A stretch of 63,480 nt of DNA, the filler included, from Octopus bimaculoides (lineage: Eukaryota): NCBI RefSeq assembly GCF_001194135.2. It is 5 parts of 5 records of this genome, joined end to end, with 100 filler letters (N's around TTAATTAATTAA, not from the genome) between each part and the next. Parts side by side here need not be neighbours in the genome. Positions count along the whole stretch, not along the records: positions 1 to 22,235 come from NC_068989.1; 4 more parts are not named here. One strand, given 5' to 3'. Both the position numbers and the translations under genes were made by a program. The notes under the pieces are model-generated. The model was not told where the DNA came from and searched no databases. It saw only the letters and a list, made by a program, of their open reading frames with translations. The stretch's first letter is position 1; the number at the start of each line of letters is the position of its first letter. This document shows positions 1-22,235 of this stretch, piece by piece.

Positions 1-101
1 CTATCGGTCTCTTTTGCCGAACCGCTAAGTTACGGGGACGTAAACACACCAGCATCGGTTGTCAGGCGATGTTGGGAGGACAAACACAGACACACAAACA
101 T

Positions 102-146
<45 letters not shown>

Positions 147-300
147 TACGACGGGCTTCTTTCAGTTTCCGTCGACCAAATCCACTCACAAGGCTTTGGT
201 CGGCCCGAGGCTATAGTAGAAGACATTTGCCCACGGTGCCATGCAGTGGGACTGAGCCCAGAACCATGTGGTTGGTAAGCAAACTACTTACCACACAGCC
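1..300 (-). mobile_element. tRNA-derived SINE, family 1 (CORE-like domain, internal microsatellite)
   Basis: The minus strand reads GGCTGTGTGGTAAG (A-box-like), GGGCTCAGTCCC (B-box-like), CCGTGGGCAAATGTCTT (CORE-like), then a (TA/CA)n tract and the 3' body. The same element recurs many times in the window. Confidence 0.85.
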
Positions 301-1257
301 AATAACATAAATAATATATAAATATATGCATATATCCATACATATATGTACATACCTACATCTATATGTACACATACATGCATATATGGGTACAGGACAT
401 CAAGAAGACATTAAACACAATGAGAAACGAAAACATAAAGACGAAGACGGAAAACGAACTCATATATATGACATATACACACACATACATTCTCTCTGAC
501 AATAATAAATCAAACAAGTATAGCCACGGATGGAACGTCTCTGATCCCAGGTGTGCTCGAAAAACGCCGACGATCAAAGACCTTCCAGGGATATACGGTC
601 ATCTAACGACTGAATCAAGTAAATAAGAAAACTTCTTTATCCACGACGTTCTAAAACCAACAAATAGTGACGTGATCGGAGAGACATTTGAGCTGTTGTT
701 TCTAGCAGGATGACGATTAGGTCGAGGCGCTCACGTCGCCTGGTCAAATTGTCTCTCGTTAAAGCAGCTGTTGCTAGAAATCAATTAGCAAACACCATTG
801 TAAACCGTGTGTCAACTGCTGTGACCTCTTAATGTTTCCAGAAGTGTGACTTGTTGGTGACGGCATCGCCGTCGTCTTTGTCGTCATAGTCTACAACAGC
901 CCACCCGCAACAGTATACACTTAGCTTATATCTATGTGGGTATATGAAGTCGGCTTTATGGATATGATTTATGTATCGTGTAGGTTATGGTGATGGTGGC
1001 GGCGGCGGCATTGGTGGTGTTGGTGGTGCTGGTGGATTTGGTGGTTTCGGGCGGCAGTCGTGGGAGTAGTGAAGAGGAAGATATATGGAGGAGGACAGGT
1101 GGGTAGGTTCATTGGCAATATCGCTACTGTTCTGAATATTTGCCTTCCCTCCTTTTCCTTCAGATTGTCTGCAAGTGCTTATGGAATCACGCATACACAC
1201 ACACAACACACACAACAAACACACATATATATACACGCACACACACACACATACATG

Positions 1258-1291
<34 letters not shown>

Positions 1292-1309
1292 CATACATAT
1301 ATATATATA

Positions 1310-1340
<31 letters not shown>

Positions 1341-1469
1341 ATGTATGTATGTGTATATGGGTGTGTGTGTGCGTGTGTACACACATGAAGAGGGTAATGA
1401 ACACTAAAAGAAAACACAGGAGGGACAAACAAGTTTTAACAAATATATTACTTTTATGCTTGACATATA

Positions 1470-1500
<31 letters not shown>

Positions 1501-2290
1501 AGGTACATACACACATATATATACACACACGCCTGTAGGTTTGCGTGTATATATGTGTGTATGTAAGTGTGTACGTATATATGTAAGTATACATGTATAT
1601 GTGTATGTACGTATGTTTGTACGTATGTACGTATGTATATAAAACTTACACTGACACACACTCCAATATAAGTATATTCTCTTCTCTTACTGGCTTCTAT
1701 TGCTCGACTGCGGCCATACTGGAGTACCGCCTTGAAGTAATTTTTTATTGGTATTGTTGAAAATTTATCACTGGAAATCGATGTCTAACGGATTTTAATG
1801 CCAGCTGATATTCTCTGAGCATAATCTCGTATATTTGACGATCCTGGTATTCTAGTTAAGAAGATGTGCAAGTTTTCTTTGATGTTGTTACATAATTGCC
1901 TTTTATATTTCATATTTATTTAGGTAGGCAGTTAGTCATCTAAGGGCCTGTAAATTTTGGTTTTCTCCGATAGAATGTCCTTGCTAGCGATTGGAAAAGT
2001 GGTATATCTGAAATCTAGCAATAACGACATTTCGGGCATTGCCGTTTTCAATAGTGCCGAAACTTGGGAAAAGATCTTCCAGGGTCTTCCAAATATAAAT
2101 AGAAATATCTCACTTTCTCTCTTTTGTTTTTCTCTACTTCTTTCTTTCTTTCTTTCACTTTCCTTCTCTCTTCCTCTTTCTTTCTCTCTCCTTCTTTATT
2201 TTGTTCAAGGGAATAAAGATTCAGATCTTTGTGACGTTTCCAGCAATTAAAGATTTTAACTGAAGTTATTTTACTGGCGGACGTATTCTG

Positions 2291-2940
2291 TACGAGGTGG
2301 TATCAAATAATTACCGGATTAGTTATGTCTAATGAAAATACTACTTGTTTACCTAAGTTTTAACATCATTTCCTTCGAAATAGTCACCTTGCGAAGCAAT
2401 ACACCGGTTCCTGCGTTCCTGCCACTTTTAGAATCCAGCCTGGAAGTTGCTTTCCGTAAGTGAGTCAAGGACCTTTTACAATTCGCTCTGGATCTCGACA
2501 ACGGTGTTAAAACAGCGACCGTTGAGCTGCCTTTTCATCTTGGGGAAGAGAAGCAAGTCCGCAGGTGCCAAATCTGGCGAATAGCATGGGTGCGGAAGCG
2601 ATACCATATTGATTTTGGAGAGAAACTCACGAGTGAGGAGAGCTCTGTGACAGGGTGCTTAGTCGTCGTGAAGAATCCAATTCTTCGCATTCCGCAGATC
2701 CGTTCGCTTTCGCCGAATGTCTTCCCTCAAACGCTTCAAAACGTCGCAGAACTCTCGATTGACAGTCTGGCCCTTGGGGGGGGGGGGCGAATTCTTGATA
2801 CACAATACCATATTGCCGGTGGTGACGCTCGTGGTGGGTCTTCCAGATCGTTCATTGTCTTCCAGGGACGTTCTTTCCACTCAAAACATTGCGCTCGACC
2901 CAATTTTTGTCCTCGGTATAATTCATCAGATTGACTGAAA
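2291..2940 (-). mobile_element. Internally deleted mariner transposon fragment
   Basis: TA plus TIR-like CGAGGTGGTATCAAA at 2291. The minus strand encodes LEDNERSGRP, WILHDD and a YSPDLAP-type C-terminus. The region that should carry WVPHEL is missing and there are stops and frameshifts. Confidence 0.85.
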
Positions 2941-3059: not shown

Positions 3060-3960
3060 AAGAATCTTCCTTAGGATTCTTATAGAATATTGGATGATAC
3101 TTTTCAGCAGGTTGACAAAGCAAGTTTCAAATGCAGTTTTTTTGTAGTGCTTTAGGTACCATGCTAAGTGTTCTAATTACCACAGGAATAATTATTGTCT
3201 TAGTCTTCCCCAGTCTCCTCAGCTCTCTGGCTAGATCCTGATGTTTCTCAATAGTTTCCATTTCTTTAGTATAGATTCTGCTTTAATAGGATATTGCAAA
3301 ATCTATGATTTTACATTGTTTATTTTGTCCTCTATAGCCATGTCTGGTCTTCTTGCCTCAATAGTACGGTCAGTCTCTGTGGCGAAGTCTCACAAGATCT
3401 AGTAATTCTCATTTTCTATCACAGCTTCTAGTTCGTGTTCATATCACTTTCTGTTGTTTTTGAAGGCACACTCAGCAATTATCCCAATGCACCCCTTTTG
3501 TGCTTGTATACTGCACTCACTTAGAGGGTGGTTTATACATTTGTCTCCTTTCCTGCAGGATCTATATTTGCTGACTGACTGAGTTTTGTTTATCTTTGCC
3601 TTTGTTCTTAGGGCTTATTCTTGAGTAGCTCTAATTAGCATTTTTGTTTCTCATTTCAAGTTCCTGTTTGTCAACTAGAGCCAGTGTTCTTTAGTTCCAA
3701 CATTGCCAGTTTGCTGTATGAATTAGCCACGTATTTCCATTTCTTTCCATTTGTTTGTTCTGTTGTTCTTTTTCTTTTTGATTTCTCCTACTGTTTCAGT
3801 TACTTTTTAGGTATCTCTGACTAACGATAATATTCTTTCTTTACTCTGCACACATAATTTTTCAGACCCAGTTTCGTAGTGTTAACAGTGTCTTCTGCGT
3901 TTAGTAATCCTCTGTCACCTTCCTTTCTTGATAGGTAGTCTATCGGTATTGCTCTTATGG
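3060..3960 (-). mobile_element. Decayed R4/Dong-like non-LTR retrotransposon 3' part (post-RT zinc finger plus restriction-like endonuclease)
   Basis: Frame-shifted minus-strand translation gives ...ETKMLIRATQE*ALRT...KYRSCRKG...NHPLSEC...DRTIEARRPDMAIEDK...IIIPVVIRTL, the RLE-clade PD-(D/E)xK pattern. Confidence 0.75.
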
Positions 3961-4107: not shown

Positions 4108-4500
4108 AAGCGACGAGCTGGCAGAGTCCTTAGCACACCGGGCAAAATGCTTAGCGGTATTTCCTCCGTCTTTATGCTTTGAGTTCAAATTCCGACGACG
4201 ACGATTTTGTCTTTCATCCACTAGCGTAGCTAGAGTGTGTGCCACCCGATGCGGCTCTTCCGTTTGTCGACCCCGGACCCCGAACCCTACAAAAAAAAAC
4301 ACATACTACCTACAGCAGACCCAAAAGTGGTGCCTTTTAAAAGTGCCGCCCGGGGCAGACTGCCCCTTCCCCAGATACGCTAGTGCTTTCATCCTTTTGA
4401 GGGCGACAAAATAAGCACTAGTTGAGCAATGGGATCGATGTAATTGACTTACCGCCTTACTCGAAAGTGCTGGCCTTGCGCCAAAATTCGAAACCATTAT
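3975..4500 (+). mobile_element. Two tandem family-3 tRNA-SINE pieces (conserved central domain, (ATT)n tail); the second is interrupted by a MITE
   Basis: GCGACGAGCTGGCAGA head at 4110, B-box GAGTTCAAATTCC, and domain CTTTCATCCTTT..GACAAAATAAGCAC. (ATT)n tail at about 4045-4105. Confidence 0.8.
4219..4385. mobile_element. hAT-type MITE
   Basis: TIRs CACTAGCGTAGC / GATACGCTAGTG, with an exact 8-bp TSD CTTTCATC at 4211-4218 and 4386-4393. Confidence 0.85.
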
Positions 4501-4977: not shown

Positions 4978-5125
4978 CTTGATAAGACGTTTTCTCCCCA
5001 ACCACATGGTTCTGGGTTCAGTCCTACAGCATGGCGCCTTGGGCACGTGTCTTCTACTATAGCTCCAAGTTGACCAAAACCTTGTGAGTACATTTGGTAG
5101 ACGGCAACTAAAAGCCTGTAGCATA
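4978..5125 (+). mobile_element. Family-1 SINE, 5' half
   Basis: CAACCACATGGTTCTGGGTTCAGTCC...CCTTGGGCACGTGTCTTCTACTATAGC, matching the element at 1-300. Confidence 0.8.
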
Positions 5126-7752: not shown

Positions 7753-7980
7753 ACTTGGTACACCTCACCCCACTCCAAGAAAAAATTATGCACACATCGA
7801 AACATTTTAAAGTAAGCATTTATTAAAATTCATTTTATTTTCAAAATTTAATAGAATCTAAAGATACATTTCTTTTNNNNNNNNNNNNNNNNNNNNNNNN
7901 NNNNNNNNNNNNNNNNNNNNNNNNNNNNNNNNNNNNNNNNNNNNNNNNNNNNNNNNNNNNNNGTGTGTGTGTGTGTGTGT

Positions 7981-8214
7981 GTATTCTTTTAGATTGCGGC
8001 CAAGCTGGGGCACCGCCTTGAAAGGTTTTAGTCGAACAAATCTACCCCAGGACTTATCTACCTGATTCTTTAGTCGAACAGCTAGGTTACAGGGACGTAA
8101 ACACACCAACACCGGTTGTCAAGCGGTGATGAGGGAACACACACTGACACGAAGACACACACACATAAATACATATCTATATATGTGTGTCTGTGTGTGT
8201 GTGTCTGTGTGTGT

Positions 8215-8245
<31 letters not shown>

Positions 8246-8628: not shown

Positions 8629-8665
<37 letters not shown>

Positions 8666-9293
8666 AAATATTTTATGATTATATACATAATCATAACAAG
8701 GGGTCGGCTCCATGCATCACCACGCACCGTAAGAAATAGACGCTAAAGTCCTTTTTTACTACCTTAAAATCTCCGAGAATAACACACTTTATTGTAGGCA
8801 AGCAAAAGAAAAATAATGAATCAATATGGCTGCTTAACTACGGACGCGTTTCGAACTTAAAGTAAAAAATAATTTTACTTACTGTTTCTCTTCAGCATAG
8901 TATTTCGTATAAGTTCACGAGTATTTCAAAATATGCACGCAATCAGCGTCATCGTATGTCCGATATTTATCCAGACTCGTAAAAATATACCGCCAAGTAT
9001 AATTCATATCTTTCTTTTATATGCACGTGTGTGTTAAGATCTAGACCGCAGTAAATGCAGCTTCGATCATGGAGTGAATTTATTCAAATATTATTTTAAT
9101 AATAAAGGGTAAAAATCAATAAAATTTACAGCATTATTGATTCATTATTTTTCTTTTGCTTGCCTACAATAATGAGTGTTATTCTCGGGGATTTTAAGGT
9201 AGTGAAAAAACTTTAGCGTCTATTTTTTACGGTGCGTGGTGAGGCATAAAGTCGACCCCTTGTTATAATTATGTATATAATTATAAGATATTT
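8666..9293. mobile_element. Non-coding element with ~165-bp inverted arms enclosing a hammerhead motif (Penelope-like inverted-pLTR architecture)
   Basis: 8666-8832 is the imperfect reverse complement of 9129-9293. The spacer is about 296 bp and has no ORF. Confidence 0.8.
8837..8901 (-). ncRNA. Minimal type-I hammerhead ribozyme, intact core
   Basis: Minus strand: ACTATG | CTGAAGA | G-AAAC...AAGTAAAA/TTTTACTT...GTT-C | GAA | ACGCGT | C | CGTAGT. All core nucleotides are present, helix I has 6 bp and helix III is palindromic. The GUC site predicts cleavage between 8843 and 8842. Confidence 0.8.
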
Positions 9294-9734
9294 TGGGATT
9301 TTGCGGAGGGTCAAAATTGGTAACACAAACAGGATATATATGTATAGAACTTTTCCTACCTTGTGATAGAACTTCCCATGGCCATCAACATAAACTTTCT
9401 CACTTATAACGCCTGTACTTTCTGAAAATATATCTTTCCCAAATAAAGCTCACTTCATATTCAAGGCTCTGAAGAAGCTATATGATGTTATCCTGGTTCT
9501 GAGCTAAGAGTCCACCACATCTTATGAAAGAAACAACAATAAGCCAATGAAGTTCATTACATAACATTTGGTTTTTTCCTCGTGTCATCTCTTTGTTTTC
9601 TATTACCATTCTATACTTGAATAACATTGTGTTCTGGACCATACCTATACTGAGTTCTACACCACGTTATTAATCTCATTATGCCTTAGTGAAATATTAA
9701 AATAATGTTTATCTATCTATCTATCTATCTATCT

Positions 9735-10145
9735 GGCTGTGTGGTAAGAAGTTTGCTTTGAAACCACGTGGTCTGGGTTCAGTTCCACTGCGTGGTACCT
9801 TGAGCAAGTGTCTTCGATAGCCACGGGCCAACAAAAGCCTTGTGAGTTGGTTTGGTAGACGGAAACTGAAAGAAGCACGACGTATATATAAATATATATA
9901 AATGTATAAGAAGCACGCCGTATATATAAATACCAGGATAACATCATATAGCTTCTTCAGAGCTTTGAATATGAAGTGAGCTTTATTTGGGAAAGATATA
10001 GCTTAGCGGTTCGATAAAAGAGGGTAATAGCCCAAGTGCCATGTCAAACTAAAACAAATATATGTACTGATGTTGATTTTTCAACTAAAATCTCCAGGAC
10101 GGTGATCCAGTATGAACGCAGGTCAATAACTGAAACAAGTAAAAG
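9735..10145 (+). mobile_element. Family-1 SINE carrying a templated inverted insertion
   Basis: Head GGCTGTGTGGTAAG at 9735 and 3' body ending GAAACAAGTAAAAGA. 9932-10000 is an inverted copy of 9429-9497. Confidence 0.8.
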
Positions 10146-11280
10146 ATATGTGTGTGTATTTGTGTGTGCCTTTGTATGACAGTGTGTGCGCGCGCGTGCG
10201 TAATATCTCTGAAGCTGAAGGTTAGAAGAATAACCCGTCCTGCTAGCGCTAAGTGACTGAGAAATTATGCTGTTGAAATGAAACTGTACAGATTAATTAG
10301 CAACAGAAAGAAGGTAGTTTTGTATTATCTAATTTCAAAAAAAAAAAAACTTTAAGATGTATGTGAAGTAGAGGTGGTCGTTATGATGTGTAAACGATAA
10401 CGTTGTTGCTAGGTAAAGGAGCAGGTACGTGGATCAAATCCCATTAGCAAATCTCAGTTTCTTTGTTTTGTTTTGTTTTTTCCTTCTGTTTCAATATGCT
10501 GCTAATTATAACAATATGTCACATTGAAACAAACGTTTCTTTGTACATATGTGCGTGTCTATTTTTTATAACTGTGTGCACATTTTATATGTATGTATAT
10601 ATATATATATATATATATGTGTGTTTGTGTGGGGGGGTTGCCTATTTATCTGTTTATGTCTCGGTGATGTATGTATTTTGTGTTTATATCTGTGTATGTA
10701 ATGTGAATATGTTTATATTTGTATCTAAGTATATGTATATGTGAAAATATACGTGTGTATTTATGTTTGTGTGTATGTATATGTAGATTCTTGTCTCTGT
10801 TTGTGTATATATGTATGCTTATGTGAACGTGCTTATGTTCGTATGTATGCGTATGCATATAGGTGGATGCATATATTATCAGATGTCACTTTTGGCTTAG
10901 CTGTTGAAATATACATTAATTTATGCAGTTGTTCTATCCGGTAACCAGTGACACCAGTCGAACACACCTATCAACAACTAGTTTATATGTCAGCTTAACC
11001 TGCGTGACAAGTGGCTCGCATGAAATTCTTTACACACTTCTGGTTTTGTGTATCCTATTTTATTCCGGAATCTTCGAATACCATATAAGGAGAGAAAAAA
11101 GTACATGAATATATAAAGAGCATTCAACGTGCCTTATTATAAAGCTGTGAACGTCCGTGAAAGGGAAGTGTGAATTTACGTATATATTACTAAGACAATT
11201 ACCAACTAAAATCGGTGAAGTGTTCGGCTTAGAATAGGAAACTGGAATTTGAACCCGAATCGAAAAGTTTTTAATATTTG

Positions 11281-12080
11281 AGCTGGCAAAATCGTTAGTA
11301 CACCAAGCAAAATACCTAACGGCATTTCGTGCGTCCTTATGTTCTGAGTTCAAATTCTGCTTTTCATTAATAAATTAGGTAGGAGTTGAACGTTGGGATC
11401 TGTGTAATCGACTTAAACCCTACCTGAAATTGCTGGCCTTGTACCAAAATTTAAAACCAGTATTATTTATTTATTATTTTGTTTTATTTTAGTCGGGAAG
11501 GAAACGCCTTTGATGTCTGATAACAAAAAACACATTCGGAGTTTACATTCTACTGCAAAATATATGTACATATCTTGAGCAAAATTAATTAATCTCATTT
11601 CTATTCTCAGTATCAATGGGTAAAATATGGTGGTGAGCTGGTAGAATTGCTCGCACGCTGAACGAAATGTTTAACGGCATTTCGTCCGTTTTTACTTTCT
11701 GAGTTCAGATTCCGCCGAGGTCCAGTTTGTCTTTCATACTCTCGGAGTCGATAAAATAAGTACTAGTCGAGTCCGGGGGTTGATGGAATCGACTTACCCC
11801 TCCCTCGAAATTGTTGACCTTGCGCTAAAGTTTAAAAACAATATTAATGAGTGAAATTAAAGCAGCGAGCTGGCAGAACCGGTGCTGCGTCGGACAAAAT
11901 ACTTACCGGTATTTCGTCCAGCTTTACGTTCTAAGTTCAAATTCCACAGAGACCCATTTTTGCTTTTCATCCTTTCGGGGTCGATAAAATAAGTAACAGT
12001 TGAGTCCTGAGGCCGATGTAATTGACTTACTTCCTCCATTAAAACTGCTGGCCTTGTGCCAGAATTTGAAATCAGATATT
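11281..12080 (+). mobile_element. Three head-to-tail family-3 SINE copies
   Basis: GAGCTGG(C/T)AGAA heads near 11281, 11635 and 11867, each with a B-box AGTTCA(A/G)ATTC and an AAAATTT(G/A)AAA-type end. Confidence 0.8.
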
Positions 12081-13891: not shown

Positions 13892-15190
13892 TTGGGTCAT
13901 CCCATAGATAATGCGGTTTTTTCAATTGCATGAACTAAAAGTCGGAGGGGAACGGGATAAACTGCCTGTATCAACTTGCTGTAAAAGTATTAAGTAATTT
14001 TACCTTGTTCTTATCCTTAGTGCAAGTTTTAAAGAGTGCAGTTCGATTTTAACAGTTATTTTTGCCAAGCTATAAGTGGAGTGACAAAGGAGCACATTCG
14101 GCATATTTTGCTTTATGAGTTCAATAATGGCAACAACGCAACGGAAAGAGCGAGGCGTATTAATGCAGTATATGGGGATCGGACAATAAGCGTAAGCCAG
14201 TGTTAACGGTAGTTCCAGAAATTCCGAGCCGGAAACTACAGCCTAGAAGACGAGCTTCGTCCTGGAAGATCTGCAGAGCTCGACGAGGACGTCCTGCAAA
14301 CCCTGGTGGAACAAAATCCCATCGTAACTGTTGAGGAACTAGAAGAGAAGCTTGAATTTGGTCATTTAACCATTCAAAACCTGCGTTCCATCAGAAGAGT
14401 CAGCAAATTAGGTCAATGGGTTCCTCACACTTTCCAAGTCTAATGGCGCGCAGAGAGTGAATGTGTGCTCTTCTTTGCTGTCATGTCTCATGAATGAACC
14501 ATTTTTCGACCGAATAGTGACTGGTGACGAGAAATGGGTTCTCTATAAAAATGTCAAGCGCTGAAGATTGTGGGTAGGGAAAGGCGAAACACCGGCACCC
14601 CAGGCTAAAGAAAATTTTCACCCACGTATGGTGTTGTTATCTGTTTGGTGGGATATGAAAGATTTAATCGACTTCGAACTTTTAAACCCAAACCAAATGA
14701 TAACAAAGGAGAGCTACTACGAGCAGCTTGAGCAGCTTAAATCAGCGCTAGAAGAAAACTGACCATCTTTGGTTTCAAGACGAAACGGATTCTTCCATCA
14801 GGATAATGCTCGGTCACATACAGCGAGGGTGACATTTCAAAGGCTGGAGCAGTTTGAATGGGAAACAAAGCCCCACCCACGATATTCGTCGGACATTGCT
14901 GATTATCATTTATTCCGATTATCTGATTATCATTTATTCCGCAGTCTTCAAAATCATTTGGACGGAAAAAAATACAAATTCTGTAGACGAGGTCAGAACA
15001 ATACTGGAGGAGTATTTTTCGTGACAGGCAGGCGAATTTTGGAAGAGGGGCCTTGCAAGTCTACCAGATGGAAAAGCATTGTCAAAAATGAAAGAGAGTA
15101 TATTTTATATTAAAAAAGAGCTTTGTTTATCTTAATTTAGAAAACTAAAAGAAGTATAAAAAAACTGCATTATTAATGGGATGACCCAAA
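13892..15190 (+). mobile_element. Full-length (~1.3 kb) inactive mariner element (D,D34D type)
   Basis: TIRs TTGGGTCATCCCATAGATAATGCGG / CTGCATTATTAATGGGATGACCCAA with flanking TA. Transposase motifs KEHIRHILLYEF, WVPH, IVTGDEKW, FFHQDNARSH and HPRYSSDIADYHLFRSL are present, with several stops and frameshifts. Confidence 0.95.
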
Positions 15191-15469: not shown

Positions 15470-15690
15470 CTCAATATTCTTTTTCCACTCTAGACACAAG
15501 GCCCAAAATTTGGGGGGAGGGGGCCAATCGATTAGATCAACCCAAGTACACAACTGGTACTTAATTTATCGACCCAGAAAGGATGAAAGGCAAAATCGAT
15601 CTCAGTGGAATTTGAACCCAGAACATAAAAACATGAAATACCGGTGAGTATTTTGCCCGGCGTGCTAACGTTTCTGCTAGCTCGCCTCTT
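15470..15690 (-). mobile_element. Family-3 SINE
   Basis: ATCGACCCAGAAAGGATGAAAGGCAAAATCGA...GGAATTTGAACCCAG...CTAGCTCGCC. Confidence 0.8.
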
Positions 15691-17587
15691 TGCTTAGCTC
15701 AAAATATAAATAATAAAAGATTTAAAGAATCAAAAACAATTTTAAATCATTGTAACTGAAGGATGAAGGAAAGCTACACAGTTTGAAAGTGTCTTCACCA
15801 CCGTACCATACTTCCATGTTGCTTGATTAGAAACGAATGCTAACACACTGTCAGTTAATCTTGAAGGAAATGTGGCCATTAACTGTTGTTTATGGTTTAA
15901 ANNNNNNNNNNNNNNNNNNNNNNNNTAGTCCATCTTTAACGTCTTCTTTGATTGAAGGCTCTCACTTTTTGAGACGCATTTGTAGTTGAAGTAAACTTTG
16001 TTCTGGAGTTATTTTATAACAATCAGATGATCTCACAAAATCTGGGTTGGTGGAAATTTATGGCTTTAGACAAAAGAGCTAAAAATAATATCTAAAAAAG
16101 ACATTAATAAAAATAGCAATAATAAAGTCGTGAATAATAATAACGGTTTCAAATGTTGACACAATGTCAGAAGTTGTTAGGTAAGTTGATTACATCGATC
16201 TCAGCGCTTAACTGGTGCTTTATTTTGTCGACCCCCTAGAGAATGGAAAACAATGTTGACTCTAACACAATTTGAACTGCAGAGTGTAGTCATAACAAAT
16301 ATTTCGTGGCATGTTTTTTTTTTCCTGATACCGTAACAATTTTGCTGTTCTACCGTTCTAAATACAATACTATCTAAATACAATCGCTCTAAATACAATC
16401 GCTTTCTTGATCATGTCTGAGAACGTGTCCGATCCGGTTTCAGCGTCGGCTTCTTATTTCGTCACTGATCCTGTTGATGCCTGTTATTGTCTCAATTGTA
16501 ACCAAGATTGTGAAAGCGATTGTATCAGCTTGAGGAGAAAAGAGCAGCATGGCGCCCTAAATGGAGAAGGACCACTGACAAGGAAAGGAGATGAACGAGA
16601 AGGGTGGAGAAGCTAGAACGAGACCAGAACAGTAGCAGAAAACAGAGATCGTGTTGCGACCTCATGACACGAAGAGAACTAACAAACTAATCGCTCTAAG
16701 TAATGGTTTTTGATTTATGTACAGAGCCAACACTAGTACTTAATTTTATCGACAATGGAAGTATTAAAGGCAAAATTAACCTCTTTGGGGTTTGAACGTA
16801 ATGAGACAAGTAATATCGCAATACATTTTATCCGACGTTCTAACGATTCTGCCAGTTTACTACCTTGAAAGGTTTCTAATAGTTTTATTCAATTAAATCG
16901 ACCTCAGTATTATATGACTGGTAGAAGACAAGCCAGTTGTTAAAAAATAATACCCATATCGATCCTGTTAAAGATCAAGGTCTAAATTCAACTGATTGGA
17001 AAGTTTAACTCTTTGAACGCGGAGAGTAGATATATCAGCTGACTTTTATTGCTGTTAACTGCGGAAAACGGTTTTACCGAACAGTTTTGAAAAAAAAGCT
17101 TCTCCCGATGCTGTAGGAAGCGGAAGCACCTTCGGTGACACTTTTTTCCCTTTTTTTTTTTTTTTCATATTTCATTGAATATCTCTTTACGGAGATATTT
17201 TAGTGGTGGATATGAAAACAGCTCCTACAGGAGGCACAGATAAAGTATAGCAGAAGCAGAAAATATCAAATGAAGAAATTACCATAAAATTTATCAAAGA
17301 TTTAATAAGGTTAGGATTATTTACAAAAAAGAAAANNNNNNNNNNNNNNNNNNNNNNNNNNNNNNNNNNNNNNNNNNNNNNNNNNNNNNNNNNNNNNNNN
17401 NNNNNNNNNNNNNNNNNNNNNNNNNNNNNNNNNNNNNNNNNNNNNNNNNNNNNNNNNNNNNNNNNNNNNNNNNNNNNNNNNNNNNNNNNNNNNNNNNNNN
17501 NNNNNNNNNNNNNNNGTAGCAACGGGCAAAATACCGCTAAGCATTTCGTCCAGCGTGCTAACGATTCTGCCAGCTCACCGCTGCTAT

Positions 17588-17618
<31 letters not shown>

Positions 17619-17829
17619 TTTTCTACTTTAGGCACAAGGCCTGAAATTTGGGGTGAGGGGACTGATCGATTACATCGACCCTAGTGTTTCCCTGGTACTT
17701 AATTTATTGATCCCGAAAGGATGAAAAGGCAAAGTCGACCTCGACGGAATTTGAACTCAGAACATATCCGCAGACGAAATACCGATTTCTTTATTACCCA
17801 TAAAGGGCTACACAAACAATTTTTAAGAC

Positions 17830-19700
17830 ATCACAAAACATAAAGACGGTACAAAACGCAACAAACATAAAATCGGGGAACTAAAACTACAAAAGCAAAT
17901 GATGATAGAAGAAAAATTAAAATAAAATGACAAATGCAAGAATGAAAAAATGAGGCGCAATGTCGACTCGAACCCCGAAGTCGGGTGGTTGCATTTATCC
18001 AGTCTTTCACTTTTACGTTCAACATCATGTAAACATTTTAACGGCTTTGCAACTCAAAAAATTGAAACACTCGCGTTACCTTTCTCCCATTAACCACTGT
18101 TACTTGTGTCCTTATCAACTGCAAATAATCAGTTCTATGGGGTGGTGTCTCCACCAACCATACCCTTATCGTTGTTATATTTTCACCAAGTTCTTTTATG
18201 TACTCCCAGTAGTTTTCCTCATGTATCAAAATGCATTTCTCAGCAGATTTCTCTGGCATTTTAACTCTTATTATTTCCTCCAACCTTTCGACTTTTCTCT
18301 CCATCTGCTCGCAATTCTTGTACTTTATCAAAACCCCTTGTATTTCACATCTTTATCCGTTCTCTCCTCCTCTTCTTGTGCATTATTAGTTTCTGGTTTT
18401 TCCATCTCTTTTTATGTTTTCTGTTGACCGTTCCTTTAACTTATTTTTCTTTCGCTTTTTAGGGTTAGTAGCTCCATTTTCGTTCTTCGTTTTCTCTGTT
18501 TCACACTACTGTCTCTCTTTCATTTCCTCAGTGTGGTCTACAATGTTTTCCTTCTCTGCTTGTGCTTTCTCTTGCTGTGGCTGTGTGAACTCATATAGGG
18601 GGCATTTGGTCTTCATATGACCTCTTTCCCCGCATATGTAGCAATTTGGTTTCCTTCCCTCTACTACCACATTTAACGTTCTCTCATCATCCACTTCTAT
18701 CTGGTAGGGAATTCTTATAAGAATATCTCGTAGCCATTGAGGAGGGGAGCGAGAACACGTGCCTCGGCAACTTTGAGGAAGTAATTTTGTTTCCAGCGAC
18801 CGCAGTCACCGGGCATTCACACTGCCTATTCTGAGCGCAACCATGAGTTTGGATAAAGCGAAAGAAAAGCACTTATCTATAGGTTACACGGGTCGCCGCT
18901 CCCGCGGTCGGTAATCCTTTGTAAATAGTTCTTTTTATGGTGGTCCGTAATTCTCCAATAGCATTCGGGTGACTTGTTTTTAAATGAGTGTATATGTTTT
19001 GTTGTATGGCAATAAATTTTTATTTTTTGTGGAATGTGGTATGTAGGTGTGATGTAGCTGTCTTCATCAATGTTTAATATATTGCTCAATGTATGAACTC
19101 TGTATTGCTTGTATATATTGATGTGTAGTTGTCTAAGTTATTGATTCTGTTTGTATTCGTTTCTGTGTGACGGTTCTGTTTTTGTGTGCTCGTGCTAGGT
19201 TGTGTTTGTGTGGAAGTGTCTGGAGTGGTGTCACATTTTTGTGTTTTTTTAATTTTTTTTTTTGTGTTGCTGCAGCTTTTTTTCTTCAGTTCTCTGTTTT
19301 CTCTTCCCTTTAAACACTATCCACTCTTCGGATTTCCCGTCCGACGCTCCGGTCACGTCTGAAGCGTCGTCAGGGAGGCGTACATTTGCAAAGATGAGCA
19401 TTAACTCAACTGTGCTTTTGTCTTCGTTTTCTGTTTTATTCTTTGTTTTTGCTGCAACTGACTGTCCTACTCTTCTTCGATGACCAGCGTCCCGCGCTGC
19501 TGTGTCCTCTTGTTCGTTTGCTCCTGCTGTAGCTGCTGGTGATTCTGCTGTGATGGAGATGTTAGCAGCAGGAACATTTTGGTAGGTGCTTTCTTGAATG
19601 AGCAGAAAGCCATTAAATGGTTCTGTCCTCGCTGAAAAAGAGTAACTCATAAGACATGACAGACTAGGGCAGTACATCTACTGGAATGTTTGTAAATATT
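17830..19700 (-). mobile_element. Decayed ORF1 (gag-like, CCHC knuckle) of an L1/Tx1-like non-LTR element
   Basis: IEVDDERTLNVVVEGRKPNCYICGERGHMKTKC (C-x2-C-x4-H-x4-C), flanked by broken basic/acidic low-complexity frames. The clade assignment is an inference. Confidence 0.65.
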
Positions 19701-19714
19701 ACAAAATTAAATCC

Positions 19715-20260
19715 CATGATAAGTGGTACAGGCACCATCCAGAGGATGCAAAAATGGCGAGGACGTCACCATCCTTTGAAACTTCCCAACGCAAACAGAC
19801 AGAGAAATTGACTCCAATCAACCAGACATTGTGATCAAGGACTACAACAGAAGAACTTGTCTGTTAATAGATATGTCTGTCCCACAAGATCAAAATGTCT
19901 CAAGAAAGGAATATGAAAAGCTTTCTCACTATAAAGATCTGCAAATTGAAATCACAAAGATGTGGAAGCTTAGTACTACGATAATACCAATAGTAATCGG
20001 TGCGTTGGGAATGATAAAGAAGGGAGCTGAGAAGAATGATAAAGAAAGGAGCTGAGAAGAATGATAAAGAAGGGAGCTGAGAAGAATGATAAAGAAGGGA
20101 GCTGAGAAGAATGATAAAGAAGGGAGCTGAGAAGAATGATAAAGAAGGAGCTGAGAAGTATATTAAGCAACTTCCTGGTCACTCCAATCTCCGTAAACTA
20201 CAAAAGATAACCTTGATGGGAACAGCTCATATACTGCGGAAAGCACCCTTCATCTAAAAT
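19715..20260 (+). mobile_element. R4/Dong-like non-LTR 3' fragment (RLE domain) with an internal 25-bp x6 array
   Basis: HDKWYRHHPE...NQPDIVIKDYNRRTCLLIDMSVPQD...EKLSHYKDL...IIPIVIGALG, then after the array YIKQLPG...KITLMGTAHILRK. Confidence 0.85.
20010..20158 (+). repeat. Minisatellite, 6 x AATGATAAAGAAGGGAGCTGAGAAG
   Basis: Five 25-nt units plus one 24-nt unit, counted directly. Confidence 0.95.
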
Positions 20261-21223
20261 TGGAATAAATGTGGTGATAATTTCAGCGTGCATAGCAAAA
20301 CAAAAATGCCCTTGTTACTCTTNNNNNNNNNNNNNNNNNNNNNNNNNNNNNNNNNNNNNNNNNNNNNNNNNNNNNNNNNNNNNNNNNNNNNNNNNNNNNN
20401 NNNNNNNNNNNNNNNNNNNNNNNNNNNNNNNNNNNNNNNNNNNNNNNNNNNNNNNNNNNNNNNNNNNNNNNNNNNNNNNNNNNNNNNNNNNNNNNNNNNN
20501 NNNNNNNNNNNNNNNNNNNNNNNNNNNNNNNNNNNNNNNNNNNNNNNNNNNNNNNNNNNNNNNNNNNNNNNNNNNNNNNNNNNNNNNNNNNNNNNNNNNN
20601 NNNNNNNNNNNNNNNNNNNNNNNNNNNNNNNNNNNNNNNNNNNNNNNNNNNNNNNNNNNNNNNNNNNNNNNNNNNNNNNNNNNNNNNNNNNNNNNNNNNN
20701 NNNNNNNNNNNNNNNNNNNNNNNNNNNNNNNNNNNNNNNNNNNNNNNNNNNNNNNNNNNNNNNNNNNNNNNNNNNNNNNNNNNNNNNNNNNNNNNNNNNN
20801 NNNNNNNNNNNNNNNNNNNNNNNNNNNNNNNNNNNNNNNNNNNNNNNNNNNNNNNNNNNNNNNNNNNNNNNNNNNNNNNNNNNNNNNNNNNNNNNNNNNN
20901 NNNNNNNNNNNNNNNNNNNNNNNNNNNNNNNNNNNNNNNNNNNNNNNNNNNNNNNNNNNNNNNNNNNNNNNNNNNNNNNNNNNNNNNNNNNNNNNNNNNN
21001 NNNNNNNNNNATGTGACATTCATTGTCCCCGGAATTAAGTCTATAGTGTTCAGGTCACACGGCAAACAAACACTTTGAAATATGTTGTCGCTCTTTTCAG
21101 GAAAAGAAATGTGCATATTTTATTAAAATTTTATTCCTATTTTTAATTTTATTTCCTTTCGACCATATAACTCTGCCGTTAAGAAAAAACAGGTAACGAT
21201 TTCAAGTCATATAACTTACACGC

Positions 21224-21420: not shown

Positions 21421-21819
21421 ACTCTACACGTATAAACACGCGTATTTATATAGTGTGTCACTGTTTCTTTGTTAGTATGATTTTTTTAAATGTTTTATCT
21501 GTTTTTAAAATATACTTTATGCATATGTACGTCAACTATGACGTAAGTAGATATCTATAAGAACGCGTTTTCATTTCTACCCTGAAAAGAGAGAGAGAGA
21601 CGGGGAGAGAAAAACAAACAGATAGATAGACCGAGACCTAGATAAAAAGACGGAGAGAGAGAGTTAAAAAAAAGTAGGTAGCTAATTATTTACTTATCGT
21701 TGTATATTTTCAGTGACTTATTGAAGAAACTTAATATTATTATTGATTTCCAACGTGTACTTGGAATTTGAGGGACGACATAACAATTTATATATCTTTT
21801 CTGTTATAGGTACAAAGTC

Positions 21820-22235
21820 TGAAGTTTTGAGAAGGGCTAGTGATTAAATGATACTTATTAATCGATTCCGAATGCATGAAAAGCAAAAATCGACCTCGGC
21901 GGAATTTGAGCTCAGAGCACAAAGACAGGAAATGCCGTTAAGCATTTTAACTCGCGTATTAATCATTCTTTTCTATTATAGGTACAAGGTCCGAAATTTT
22001 GGGGAGGTGGAGGGGGGGCTACTCGATTAGATCGACGCCAGTACGCAACTGGTACTTAATTTATCGACCCCGAACGGATGAAAGGCAAATTCGACCTCGG
22101 CGGAATTTGAGCTCAGAGCACAAAGACAGGAAATGCCGTTAAGCATTTTAACTCGCGTATTAATCATTCTTTTCTATTATAGGTACAAGGTCCGAAATTT
22201 TGGGGAGGTGGAGGGGGGGCTACTCGATTAGATCG
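21820..22235 (-). mobile_element. Tandem family-3 SINE copies, 201-bp period
   Basis: GACCTCGGCGGAATTTGAGCTC occurs at about 21892 and 22093, and the following ~145 bp are identical. Confidence 0.8.

What the first reader, a model, noticed from the sequence alone, without database searches (positions are those of the whole stretch)
8666..9293. Intact minimal hammerhead ribozyme abutting one arm of a 165-bp inverted repeat: candidate non-coding Penelope-like retro-element
Seen: the minus strand at 8901-8837 has the complete core CUGAAGA...GAAA...GUC, a G-C-closed helix II, a 6-bp helix I and a palindromic helix III (ACGCGU). It starts about 4 nt inside the spacer between long inverted arms, and there is no ORF. 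Known: Penelope-like elements carry minimal type-I hammerheads with palindromic helix III that cleave as dimers, and often have inverted terminal repeats. Inference: this is a non-autonomous, ribozyme-bearing (retrozyme-like) family, possibly still producing self-cleaved or circular RNA.
Basis: partly seen in the sequence, partly recalled or inferred. Interest (0 to 1): 0.85.

Follow-up and report, generated by a model that had tools for sequence, protein, structure and literature searches.

The report
Lone hammerhead ribozyme relic, octopus repeat
A single, probably genuine but decayed hammerhead self-cleaving RNA motif sits beside a 167-bp inverted repeat in an octopus-like genome; it looks like the fossil of a Penelope-type retroelement insertion, a known kind of thing, not an active circular-RNA element.

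Summary
On the minus strand at 8901-8837 there is a complete type I hammerhead core, a 6-bp helix I, a G-C-closed helix II and a palindromic ACGCGU helix III. It lies 4-5 nt from the inner end of a 167-nt inverted repeat (8666-8832 / 9129-9293, 91.5% identical), and there is no ORF.

The motif is unlikely to be chance. Shuffles and simulation expect about 0.001-0.003 per window. Rfam Hammerhead_1 aligns to it end to end, but at 16.3 bits against a threshold of 34.

It is atypical and solitary:
- Helix II is a 36-nt interrupted A/U hairpin.
- The hammerhead fold is not the predicted fold in context.
- There is no second hammerhead, tandem repeat, RT or GIY-YIG gene in 22 kb.
- The arms have diverged by about 9%.

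No other copies could be retrieved, because octopus DNA is not in the searchable collections. Family conservation is therefore untested.

Best reading (about 0.5): a dead, head-to-head pair of 5'-truncated 3' ends of a Penelope-like element next to a (TG)16 microsatellite, with the longer copy keeping the ribozyme. The retrozyme and circular-RNA claim is not supported. This is a known kind of feature and of low interest.

The parts
8633..8664 (.). (TG)16 microsatellite, which reads as (CA)16 on the minus strand. It abuts the outer end of the left arm with one base (C8665) between. It may be the insertion target.
   Evidence: TRF: period 2, 16 copies, 100% matches; sequence. Microsatellites are frequent throughout this window, so the adjacency is weak evidence.
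8666..8832 (-). Left arm of the inverted repeat. In the preferred model it is the 3'-terminal 167 nt of the longer, minus-strand retroelement fragment.
   Evidence: Inverted pairs I1 and I2. Gapped alignment with the right arm: 151/165 identical, one 2-nt indel.
8837..8901 (-). Type I hammerhead ribozyme-like motif. Helix I is 8901-8896 with 8842-8837. Core CUGAAGA is 8895-8889. Helix II is 8888-8853. GAAA is 8852-8849. The palindromic helix III ACGCGU is 8849-8844. H17 is C8843, and the predicted cleavage is between 8843 and 8842.
   Evidence: It is the only descriptor hit in the window on either strand. Rfam RF00163 aligns to model positions 1-45 at 16.3 bits. Expected by chance: 0.0006-0.003 per window.
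8902..9128 (-). Rest of the 296-nt spacer. It is unique, AT-rich sequence with no coding signal. In the preferred model it is the upstream part of the longer 5'-truncated copy.
   Evidence: No direct repeat with the hammerhead-plus-arm part, no mirrored hammerhead, and no similarity elsewhere in the window. No protein homology.
9129..9293 (+). Right arm of the inverted repeat. In the preferred model it is a second, shorter 5'-truncated copy (3'-terminal 165 nt) inserted head to head.
   Evidence: The similarity ends abruptly at 9127-9129 on the inner side and at 9293 on the outer side.

Best explanation
The locus is the fossil of one insertion of a hammerhead-bearing, Penelope-like (PLE-type) retroelement in an Octopus genome.

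Proposed anatomy (inferred):
- A 463-nt, heavily 5'-truncated 3' end lies on the minus strand (9128 to 8666). It carries the element's type I hammerhead, about 177 nt from its 3' terminus.
- A second, shorter 5'-truncated copy of the same 3' end (165 nt, plus strand, 9129 to 9293) is joined to it head to head. This creates the 167-nt inverted repeat.
- The unit sits at the edge of a (TG)16 microsatellite.

Proposed mechanism (from established hammerhead and PLE knowledge, not shown here):
- In the parent element the ribozyme worked as a dimer. Two copies pair through the palindrome ACGCGU to build a 6-bp helix III.
- The RNA is then cut 3' of C17 (GUC|C, here 8843|8842). That leaves a 2',3'-cyclic phosphate and a 5'-OH, which processes multimeric or read-through transcripts.

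At this locus there is only one copy. Its helix III cannot form alone, its helix II is interrupted, and the two arms have drifted about 9% apart. That corresponds to roughly 12 My at the rate implied by PMC13282606. The locus is therefore most likely inert today.
For: The motif is real and non-random:
- Complete core, 6-bp helix I, G10.1-C11.1 and palindromic helix III.
- 0.0006-0.003 expected per window.
- It is the only hit in the window even with a relaxed descriptor, for which 0.16 hits are expected.
- An independent covariance model, Rfam Hammerhead_1, aligns end to end at 16.3 bits.

Hammerheads with the same core exist elsewhere:
- The candidate's own 20-nt core (CUGAAGAG...CGAAACGCGUCC) recurs in seven metagenome loci with 6-bp helix I and covarying 4-bp helix II. 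They score 24-48 bits on Rfam hammerhead models.
- One of them, L017, lies 717 nt downstream of an RT ORF on the same strand (RVT_1 E 1.4e-6).

Host and architecture fit a PLE:
- A LINE fragment in the window is 75-92% identical to O. bimaculoides proteins.
- PLEs are among the abundant and recently active octopus TEs (PMC13282606, PMC8967140).
- Cephalopod genomes have Rfam hammerhead hits (235 in giant squid, PMC6962438).
- PLE insertions are highly 5'-truncated, often with an inverted 5'-truncated copy next to them. They favour microsatellites and carry the hammerhead in the pLTR near the 3' end (PMC8557442, PMC4209133).
- In the Anolis Poseidon element, reverse transcription starts 111-118 nt into the ORF, and the ORF begins inside the hammerhead (PMC11167929). 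That is a similar distance to the 177 nt seen here.

Other points:
- The arm differences look like neutral decay (9 transitions, 5 transversions, 1 indel).
- At 4.5% divergence per copy, about 26% of copies would keep all 29 constrained hammerhead bases by luck.
Against: - There is no RT or GIY-YIG coding remnant anywhere in the 22-kb window.
- No homology of the arms or spacer to any PLE could be tested.
- No other copy of the unit was found, so conservation and covariation are unknown.
- The Rfam score is less than half the gathering score. The match was not reported at all when 181 nt or the whole window were searched.
- Helix II (34-nt insert, 3 contiguous bp, 5x4 internal loop) is unlike both the 4-bp helix II of canonical type I hammerheads and the 6-8-bp helix II with a 5' bulge of PLE minimal hammerheads (PMC4209133).
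- All seven true hammerheads sharing the core have 11-12-nt inserts.
- Which arm the spacer belongs to cannot be shown from one copy.
- Microsatellites are so common in this window that adjacency to one is expected fairly often.
- No target-site duplication is evident.
Confidence: 0.5

Rival explanations
1. The hammerhead-like motif is a chance match inside an unrelated inverted-repeat structure. That structure could be a non-autonomous long-TIR DNA transposon (Mutator- or hAT-like MITE) or a local inverted duplication. The ribozyme resemblance would then have no history or function.
For: - The Rfam score is only 16.3 bits against a gathering score of 34, and the match was missed in larger searches.
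- Folding energy equals that of shuffles (z = 0.1).
- The hammerhead fold is not the MFE in the spacer or in the full element.
- Helix II just reaches the descriptor minimum.
- The motif lies in AT-rich sequence, where A/U hairpins arise easily.
- The unit has equal-length terminal inverted repeats.
- The outermost 8 nt (AAATATTT at 8666-8673, AGATATTT at 9286-9293) can also be read as a 7/8 direct duplication, which would be a possible 8-bp TSD.
- TIR elements, including Mutator, hAT and MITEs, are active in octopus (PMC13282606).
- The first stage scanned an unknown number of windows.
Against: - The chance expectation is 0.0006-0.003 per window for the loose descriptor. No shuffle or simulated hit also had G-C closure and a palindromic helix III.
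- My analytic estimate for all features together is about 1e-5 per window.
- The 3' half, CGAAACGCGUCC, matches the Rfam type I consensus base for base, and bona fide hammerheads carry the same core.
- AAATATTT is itself a palindrome, so the 'TSD' cannot be separated from the inverted repeat.
Confidence: 0.22
2. One reading: the 628-bp unit is a member of a non-autonomous, ribozyme-bearing family (retrozyme-like, mobilised by PLE enzymes). It would have its own inverted-repeat architecture and may still yield self-cleaved or circular RNA.
For: - There is no ORF.
- The core and helix I are intact.
- The dimer-type helix III matches that of amphibian and PLE hammerheads (PMC7229834, PMC4209133).
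- Solo 'monomer' retrozyme copies are common in genomes (bioRxiv 10.64898/2026.07.22.740005).
- Non-autonomous PLE derivatives are known (PMC8557442).
Against: - Retrozymes are defined by tandem units each with a hammerhead. No tandem, no second hammerhead and no internal direct repeat is present.
- A single site cannot excise a circle.
- The arms are 8.5% different, so the insertion is old.
- Helix II is interrupted and the hammerhead fold is not predicted in context.
- No other copy was found in the 22 kb.
Confidence: 0.12
3. The unit is a real hammerhead placed at the 3' base of the loop of a 167-bp hairpin. It would act as a processing device. Cleavage at 8843/8842 would open the loop of a read-through transcript and free a long double-stranded RNA, which could serve as a substrate for Dicer or ADAR.
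For: - The full minus-strand transcript is predicted to form the long hairpin (MFE -279.7 kcal/mol).
- The cut site lies about 10 nt from the stem.
- Cephalopods edit dsRNA heavily (PMC5625713).
Against: - This rests on geometry alone.
- The hammerhead fold is not kept in the predicted fold of the full element.
- A monomer with a 1-bp helix III is expected to be nearly inactive (PMC4209133).
- There is no evidence of transcription or of a conserved family.
Confidence: 0.04

Closest known systems
Canonical metazoan type I hammerhead ribozymes (Rfam RF00163 Hammerhead_1). These include the dimer-dependent amphibian satellite/retrozyme hammerheads with a 1-bp helix III capped by a palindromic tetraloop (PMC7229834).
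   Same: - Full catalytic core.
- 6-bp helix I.
- G10.1-C11.1 pair.
- The 3' half CGAAACG-CGUCC matches the Rfam consensus.
- Helix III is A-U plus the palindromic CGCG, so dimerisation would be needed.
- The same 20-nt core occurs in seven bona fide environmental hammerheads.
   Different: - Helix II is 36 nt with an internal loop, not about 14 nt (4 bp plus loop 2).
- There are no recognisable loop 1/loop 2 contacts.
- It scores 16.3 bits, against 43 bits for a true example with the same helix III (L016).
- It is not in a tandem array.
Minimal hammerheads in the pseudo-LTRs of Penelope-like elements (Cervera and de la Pena 2014, PMC4209133), together with the PLE insertion architecture (Craig et al. 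2021, PMC8557442).
   Same: - Dimer-type hammerhead with palindromic 15.2-16.2.
- G10.1-C11.1 pair.
- Occurs as a single, dispersed motif, as the paper reports for most of these motifs, which it attributes to truncated PLEs.
- Position near a 3' end.
- Inverted repeat of the kind produced by an adjacent inverted 5'-truncated copy.
- Microsatellite at the boundary.
- The host is rich in PLEs.
   Different: - No bulged nucleotide between A9 and 10.1.
- Helix II is not a compact 6-8-bp stem.
- Helix I is 6 bp, not 4-5 bp.
- No RT/GIY-YIG ORF lies nearby.
- Homology of the arms to any PLE is untested.
Non-LTR retrozymes of animals (Cervera and de la Pena 2020, PMC7229834; Li et al. 2026, bioRxiv 10.64898/2026.07.22.740005).
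   Same: Non-coding, AT-rich, carries a type I hammerhead, and probably derives from a PLE.
   Different: The defining tandem arrangement with at least 2 hammerhead units is absent. The unit is bounded by inverted repeats, not direct repeats. There is no evidence of circular RNA.
Naiad-type PLE remnants with 'HHR_half_core' (PMC8557442). In these, CUGANGA and GAAA are separated by 35-50 nt in the 3' UTR. Naiads survive only as old remnants in cephalopods, including Octopus.
   Same: The spacing between the two core boxes is long (36 nt). The element is old and decayed, sits in a cephalopod, and combines inverted copies with microsatellite association.
   Different: Those cases do not fit a hammerhead stem/loop descriptor. 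This one has helix I, G-C closure and helix III. The Naiad target bias is (TA)n, not (TG)n. Membership was not testable.
MITEs and long-TIR non-autonomous DNA transposons.
   Same: 628-bp non-coding unit with about 167-bp terminal inverted repeats.
   Different: There is no unambiguous TSD and no second copy was seen. A complete hammerhead inside a MITE would need a separate explanation.

Membership tests
Hammerhead ribozyme, type I (Rfam RF00163) | Conserved catalytic core: C3 U4 G5 A6 N7 G8 A9, G12 A13 A14, A15.1-U16.1, H17 | tested here: met
   CUGAAGA at 8895-8889, GAAA at 8852-8849, U8844, C8843.
Hammerhead ribozyme, type I (Rfam RF00163) | Three helices around the core, with helix I open and G10.1-C11.1 closing helix II | tested here: inconclusive
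   Helix I has 6 bp and the G-C closure is present. Helix II has only 3 contiguous bp, then a 5x4 internal loop and an 8-bp A/U-rich stem. Helix III has 1 bp as a monomer.
Hammerhead ribozyme, type I (Rfam RF00163) | Covariance-model score at or above the curated gathering score (34 bits) | tested here: not met
   16.3 bits over the full-length model, E 0.094 in a 75-nt search. No match was listed in the 181-nt or whole-window searches. True hammerheads with the same core score 24-48 bits.
Hammerhead ribozyme, type I (Rfam RF00163) | Conservation of the core and compensatory changes in the helices among homologues | not testable with these tools
   No homologous copy was found in the window, the protein database, or the metagenome, viral and prokaryotic contig collections. 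Octopus contigs are not held.
Hammerhead ribozyme, type I (Rfam RF00163) | Site-specific self-cleavage | not testable with these tools
   This needs in vitro transcription of monomer and dimer constructs.
PLE minimal hammerhead (PMC4209133) | Located in the pseudo-LTR of an element encoding RT plus GIY-YIG endonuclease | tested here: not met
   No RT or GIY-YIG motif or ORF in any frame of the 22-kb window. The paper says most of these motifs occur as single elements, probably from truncated PLEs, so this does not exclude derivation from a PLE.
PLE minimal hammerhead (PMC4209133) | Unpaired nucleotide between A9 and 10.1, and a compact 6-8-bp helix II | tested here: not met
   G8888 follows A8889 directly and pairs with C8853. 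Helix II is interrupted after 3 bp.
PLE minimal hammerhead (PMC4209133) | G10.1-C11.1 pair, and palindromic 15.2-16.2 / loop 3 | tested here: met
   G8888-C8853, and ACGCGU at 8849-8844.
PLE insertion architecture (PMC8557442) | An inverted 5'-truncated copy adjacent to the main copy, giving an inverted repeat made of 3' ends | tested here: inconclusive
   An inverted repeat with a one-sided unique extension is present, and this fits. A single locus cannot show that the arms are element 3' ends.
PLE insertion architecture (PMC8557442) | Insertion at a microsatellite | tested here: inconclusive
   (TG)16 lies one base from the left end and none lies at the right end. Microsatellites are very frequent in this window.
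PLE insertion architecture (PMC8557442) | Sequence homology to the 3' region of an autonomous PLE of the same genome | not testable with these tools
   No octopus PLE sequence could be obtained.
Non-LTR retrozyme (PMC7229834; 10.64898/2026.07.22.740005) | Tandem repeat units, with at least two consecutive units each carrying a type I hammerhead | tested here: not met
   TRF finds only microsatellites. There is one hammerhead in the window and no internal direct repeat.
Non-LTR retrozyme (PMC7229834; 10.64898/2026.07.22.740005) | Expression as linear and circular monomer RNA | not testable with these tools
   No transcriptome data are available here.
MITE / long-TIR DNA transposon | Terminal inverted repeats flanked by a target-site duplication | tested here: inconclusive
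   TIR-like arms are present. AAATATTT/AGATATTT could be an 8-bp TSD (7/8) but is a palindrome that also extends the inverted repeat. The flanks outside 8666 and 9293 (GTGTGC / TGGGAT) do not match.

The most novel reading that the evidence does not exclude
The unit could belong to an undescribed cephalopod family of non-coding, PLE-mobilised elements built as a long hairpin. A dimer-type hammerhead with an unusually long A/U helix II would sit at the loop-stem junction. Ribozyme cleavage would then release a roughly 167-bp double-stranded RNA as a substrate for small-RNA or ADAR pathways. This would differ from tandem retrozymes in both architecture and product.
Probability: 0.05. Interest if true: 0.6.

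Novelty: new member of a known kind. Interest (0 to 1): 0.2.

Why it matters
If the preferred reading is right, this is one more dispersed hammerhead relic of a Penelope-type retroelement. That class is already described in thousands of copies across invertebrate genomes, so it adds little beyond documenting such motifs in an octopus.

Two small points have practical value:
- A hammerhead with a complete core and an end-to-end Rfam alignment, and several clearly real environmental hammerheads, fall below Rfam gathering scores. At default filters they can be missed altogether. Routine ncRNA annotation of invertebrate genomes therefore undercounts them.
- An inverted repeat next to a ribozyme motif is more simply explained by the known head-to-head insertion habit of these elements than by a new class of element.

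It would matter more only if a genome-wide search showed a conserved family with this hairpin-plus-ribozyme layout.

Tried and rejected
- **Rfam, whole window and 181-nt region.** No hammerhead was listed. It appeared only in a 75-nt search with laxer filters. The many 'miRNA' hits are microsatellite artefacts.
- **Other copies via spurious ORFs.** A concatenate of eight stop-free translations of the unit found nothing at E<=10.
- **Exact 26-mer of the arm.** No match in the metagenome, viral or prokaryotic genome contigs.
- **Sampling the octopus genome through TE proteins.**
  - The best hits for the mariner relic were only 53% identical and not from octopus.
  - The LINE fragment hit O. bimaculoides UniRef entries, but their genes are not in the contig collection. 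Neither is an ORF of the window itself.
  - The best ENA contig (L001) shares no octopus SINEs with the window and has no copy of the unit.
- **RT/GIY-YIG partner in the window.** None was found.
- **Second or mirrored hammerhead, tandem or internal direct repeats.** None was found.
- **Pol III B-box reading of GUUCGAAAC.** Not above chance: 13 matches against 7.6 expected. No tRNA-like gene was found.
- **Covariance model from the seven environmental hammerheads.** I did not build it. They were retrieved with the candidate's own 20-nt core, so scoring the candidate against them would be circular.
- **Supplementary alignments of PLE hammerheads.** Not held for PMC4209133 or PMC8557442.
Full report
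**1. What is there**

The minus strand between 8901 and 8837 reads ACUAUG-CUGAAGA-G[34 nt]C-GAAA-CGCGU-C-CGUAGU. This gives the complete hammerhead core:
- C3 to A9 at 8895-8889, and G12 to A14 at 8852-8850.
- A15.1 at 8849, U16.1 at 8844, and C17 at 8843.
- A 6-bp helix I (8901-8896 with 8842-8837, one U-G pair).
- A G10.1-C11.1 pair (8888 with 8853).
- The palindrome ACGCGU in place of helix III.

A mechanical descriptor scan finds this site and no other on either strand of the 22,235-base piece. This remains true after relaxing the rules to helix I of 3 bp or more, the U3-A8 variant, an optional bulge and larger helix III (where 0.16 hits are expected by chance).

The inverted repeat is also real. 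The arms are 8666-8832 and 9129-9293. They share 151 of 165 aligned positions, with 9 transitions, 5 transversions and one 2-nt indel, giving a JC distance of 0.09. The spacer is 296 nt. The hammerhead ends 4-5 nt from the inner end of the left arm and lies wholly in the unique spacer.

No ORF exceeds 54 stop-free codons. A (TG)16 microsatellite (8633-8664) touches the left end.

**2. Is it more than chance?**

For a descriptor no stricter than the observed motif (helix I >=6 bp, helix II >=3 bp, GAAA within 60 nt, small helix III, H17):
- 1500 dinucleotide-preserving shuffles of the window gave 0.0027 hits per window.
- 70 Mb of first-order Markov sequence gave 0.0006.
- No random hit also had G-C closure or a palindromic helix III. 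From base composition I estimate that these two known hammerhead features lower the expectation to about 1e-5 per window.

Rfam provides an independent check. Hammerhead_1 (RF00163) aligns over all 45 model positions to exactly 8837-8901(-), and the 3' half CGAAACG-CGUCC matches the consensus. The score is only 16.3 bits against a gathering score of 34. The match was not reported when 181 nt or the whole window were searched. Rescaled by me to one family and one window, the E-value is about 0.007.

I conclude that the resemblance is very probably historical and not accidental. By the curated criterion, however, it is not a hammerhead family member.

**3. Quality of the motif**

- Helix II is the weak part. 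It has G-C, A-U, A-U (a fourth C-G pair is possible with a bulged A), then a 5x4 internal loop, then an 8-bp stem of seven A-U pairs and one G-C pair with a 5-nt loop.
- The 77-nt region folds no better than shuffles (z = 0.1).
- In isolation the 65-mer's MFE nearly coincides with the hammerhead junction (-9.4 against -9.0 kcal/mol). In the predicted folds of the 296-nt spacer and of the whole 628-nt unit, helix I and the base of helix II are replaced by other pairings.
- As a monomer, helix III is one base pair closing CGCG. Hammerheads of this type are known to need a second copy to form an extended helix III, and to be poorly active alone (PMC4209133, PMC7229834).

**4. Is there a partner or a family?**

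Within 22 kb there is nothing:
- No second hammerhead.
- No tandem repeat other than microsatellites.
- No direct repeat between the two halves of the unit, no mirrored hammerhead next to the right arm, and no similarity of the spacer to the rest of the window.
- No further copy of the arms.

Outside the window I could not test it. These searches found nothing:
- A protein search with all open frames of the unit.
- A 26-mer of the arm in the metagenome, viral and prokaryotic collections.

The reason is that the host genome is not in those collections. A LINE endonuclease fragment at 19646-20052 is 75-92% identical to Octopus bimaculoides UniRef proteins, so the window is from an Octopus. Neither those proteins nor an ORF of the window are on record in the contig index. 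The nearest retrievable contig (L001) is not an octopus.

**5. Comparators obtained here**

I scanned JGI metagenome contigs with the candidate's own core, CTGAAGAG-N(8-38)-CGAAACGCGTCC. This returned 44 loci.
- Seven are plainly real hammerheads (L016, L017, L020, L027, L029, L031, L039). They have a 6-bp helix I, a 4-bp helix II that covaries (GCC/GGC, GGG/CCC, CCG/CGG, AGG/CCU, GGC/GCC), a 5-6-nt loop 2 and the same ACGCGU.
- All seven have 11-12 nt between the boxes. The other matches have helix I of 4 bp or fewer.
- L016 scores 43.2 bits on Hammerhead_1 despite the zero-length helix III loop. The others score 24-48 bits on Hammerhead_HH9, all below its gathering score of 52.
- In L017 the hammerhead (1734-1775) lies 717 nt downstream of an RT ORF (4-1017) on the same strand (RVT_1 E 1.4e-6). 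That ORF's KPT..T..LH..S.HP stretch resembles the PLE RT signature as I recall it. This recollection was not tested.

Two conclusions follow. This exact core is used by real, retroelement-linked hammerheads. The octopus candidate differs from them by its 34-nt helix II insert.

**6. Interpretation**

Type I hammerheads in animals are known in two settings:
- The pseudo-LTRs of Penelope-like elements, as minimal, dimer-type and mostly dispersed single motifs (PMC4209133).
- Tandem non-LTR retrozymes (PMC7229834), which a 2026 preprint derives from PLE pLTRs (10.64898/2026.07.22.740005).

PLEs are abundant and recently active in octopus (PMC13282606, PMC8967140). According to Craig et al. (PMC8557442), PLE insertions have these properties:
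- They are highly 5'-truncated.
- They often carry an inverted 5'-truncated copy directly adjacent, which produces inverted repeats.
- They show a microsatellite insertion bias.
- They carry the hammerhead near the 3' end.

In the Anolis Poseidon element, reverse transcription starts 111-118 nt into an ORF that begins inside the hammerhead (PMC11167929). The ribozyme therefore lies about 100-150 nt from the insertion's 3' end.

The locus fits this layout if the longer copy is the minus strand, 9128 to 8666 (463 nt). Its hammerhead cut site is then 177 nt from the 3' end, followed by (CA)16. The shorter copy is the plus strand, 9129 to 9293.

The arm divergence of JC 0.09, or 0.045 per copy, corresponds to roughly 12 My. 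This uses the rate implied by the O. vulgaris repeat study (JC 0.09 is about 25 My from consensus) and is an inference. At that divergence, about 26% of copies would keep all 29 constrained hammerhead bases by luck, while about two hits are expected in the 36-nt helix II. An intact core with a damaged helix II is therefore what neutral decay predicts.

This model is preferred but untested, because no octopus PLE could be compared.

**7. Rivals**

- **Chance motif in a long-TIR DNA transposon or local inverted duplication.** The weak helix II, the sub-threshold Rfam score and the ambiguous 8-nt terminal palindrome (AAATATTT / AGATATTT, readable as a 7/8 TSD) keep this alive. The statistics in section 2 argue against pure chance.
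This fails the defining tandem criterion, and a single site cannot excise a circle.
- **A ribozyme that opens the loop of a 167-bp hairpin to release dsRNA.** This is geometrically possible but has no support.

**8. Verdict**

The feature is most likely a solitary, inert relic of a hammerhead-bearing Penelope-type retroelement insertion. It is a new member of a known kind and of low interest. The decisive test is a genome-wide search for copies in Octopus assemblies, which these tools could not run.

Noticed in passing
window 9422-9497 and 9932-10007: A second inverted repeat lies 130 nt to the right of the finding. Its arms are about 70-76 nt and 99% complementary, with about 434 nt between them. 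That interval holds a (TATC)6 microsatellite and an inverted SINE copy (about 9735-9880). The arms are far younger than those of the finding. This could be a recent inverted duplication or insertion, or a short-read assembly artefact.
   Followed up: partly
L016, L017, L020, L027, L029, L031, L039 (JGI/GenBank metagenome contigs): Seven bona fide type I hammerheads share the core CUGAAGAG...CGAAACGCGUCC. They have a 6-bp helix I, a covarying 4-bp helix II and a zero-loop palindromic helix III. Six of the seven fall below Rfam gathering scores (24-48 bits against 52 for HH9), and at default filters only L016 was reported. In L017 the hammerhead lies 717 nt downstream of an RT ORF on the same strand.
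   Followed up: partly
window 1-293, 4980-5114, 8058-8184, 9735-9908: These are copies, in both orientations and 79-86% alike, of a SINE-like repeat (…TTTCAGTTTCCGTCTACCAAATCC… type). From memory I recognise it as an abundant Octopus SINE.
   Followed up: no
window 4115-4497, 11280-12080, 15473-15690, 17530-17784, 21786-22235: This is a second repeat family (…GGCACAAGGCCTGAAATTTGGGG…, …GCTAACGTTTCTGCCAGCTC…), also typical of Octopus SINEs. At 21880-22235 two units lie in tandem with a 201-nt period and 98% identity, running into the end of the piece.
   Followed up: no
window 14033-15110 (+) and 2479-2880 (-): Two frameshifted relics of mariner/SETMAR-type transposases are present. The best database relatives are only 53% identical and carry Pfam Transposase_1 and HTH_48.
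   Followed up: partly
window 19646-20173 (+); also 3130-3282 (-): This is a C-terminal restriction-enzyme-like endonuclease fragment of an R4/Dong-type LINE. It is 75-92% identical to O. bimaculoides UniRef proteins. It runs into a 25-nt tandem repeat of about 6 copies (19984-20173, unit GAATGATAAAGAAGGGAGCTGAGAA).
   Followed up: partly
window 18509-18805 (-) and 19252-19677 (-): There is an ORF with a CX2CX4HX4C zinc knuckle (CYICGERGHMKTKCP) and an adjacent 142-codon ORF. Together they look like the gag-like or ORF1 part of a retroelement. The 142-aa product is not on record in the contig index.
   Followed up: no
window 1227-1645, 8137-8218 and others: Dozens of sub-threshold Rfam 'microRNA' matches (mir-3149, mir-297, mir-5014 and others, up to 74 bits) all fall on (TG)n/(TA)n/(TATG)n microsatellites and their palindromic junctions. 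They are composition artefacts.
   Followed up: yes
window 7877-7962, 15902-15925, 17336-17515, 20323-21010: Four runs of N mark assembly gaps inside the piece. The source is a gapped scaffold assembly, so repeat structures near the gaps may be incomplete.
   Followed up: no
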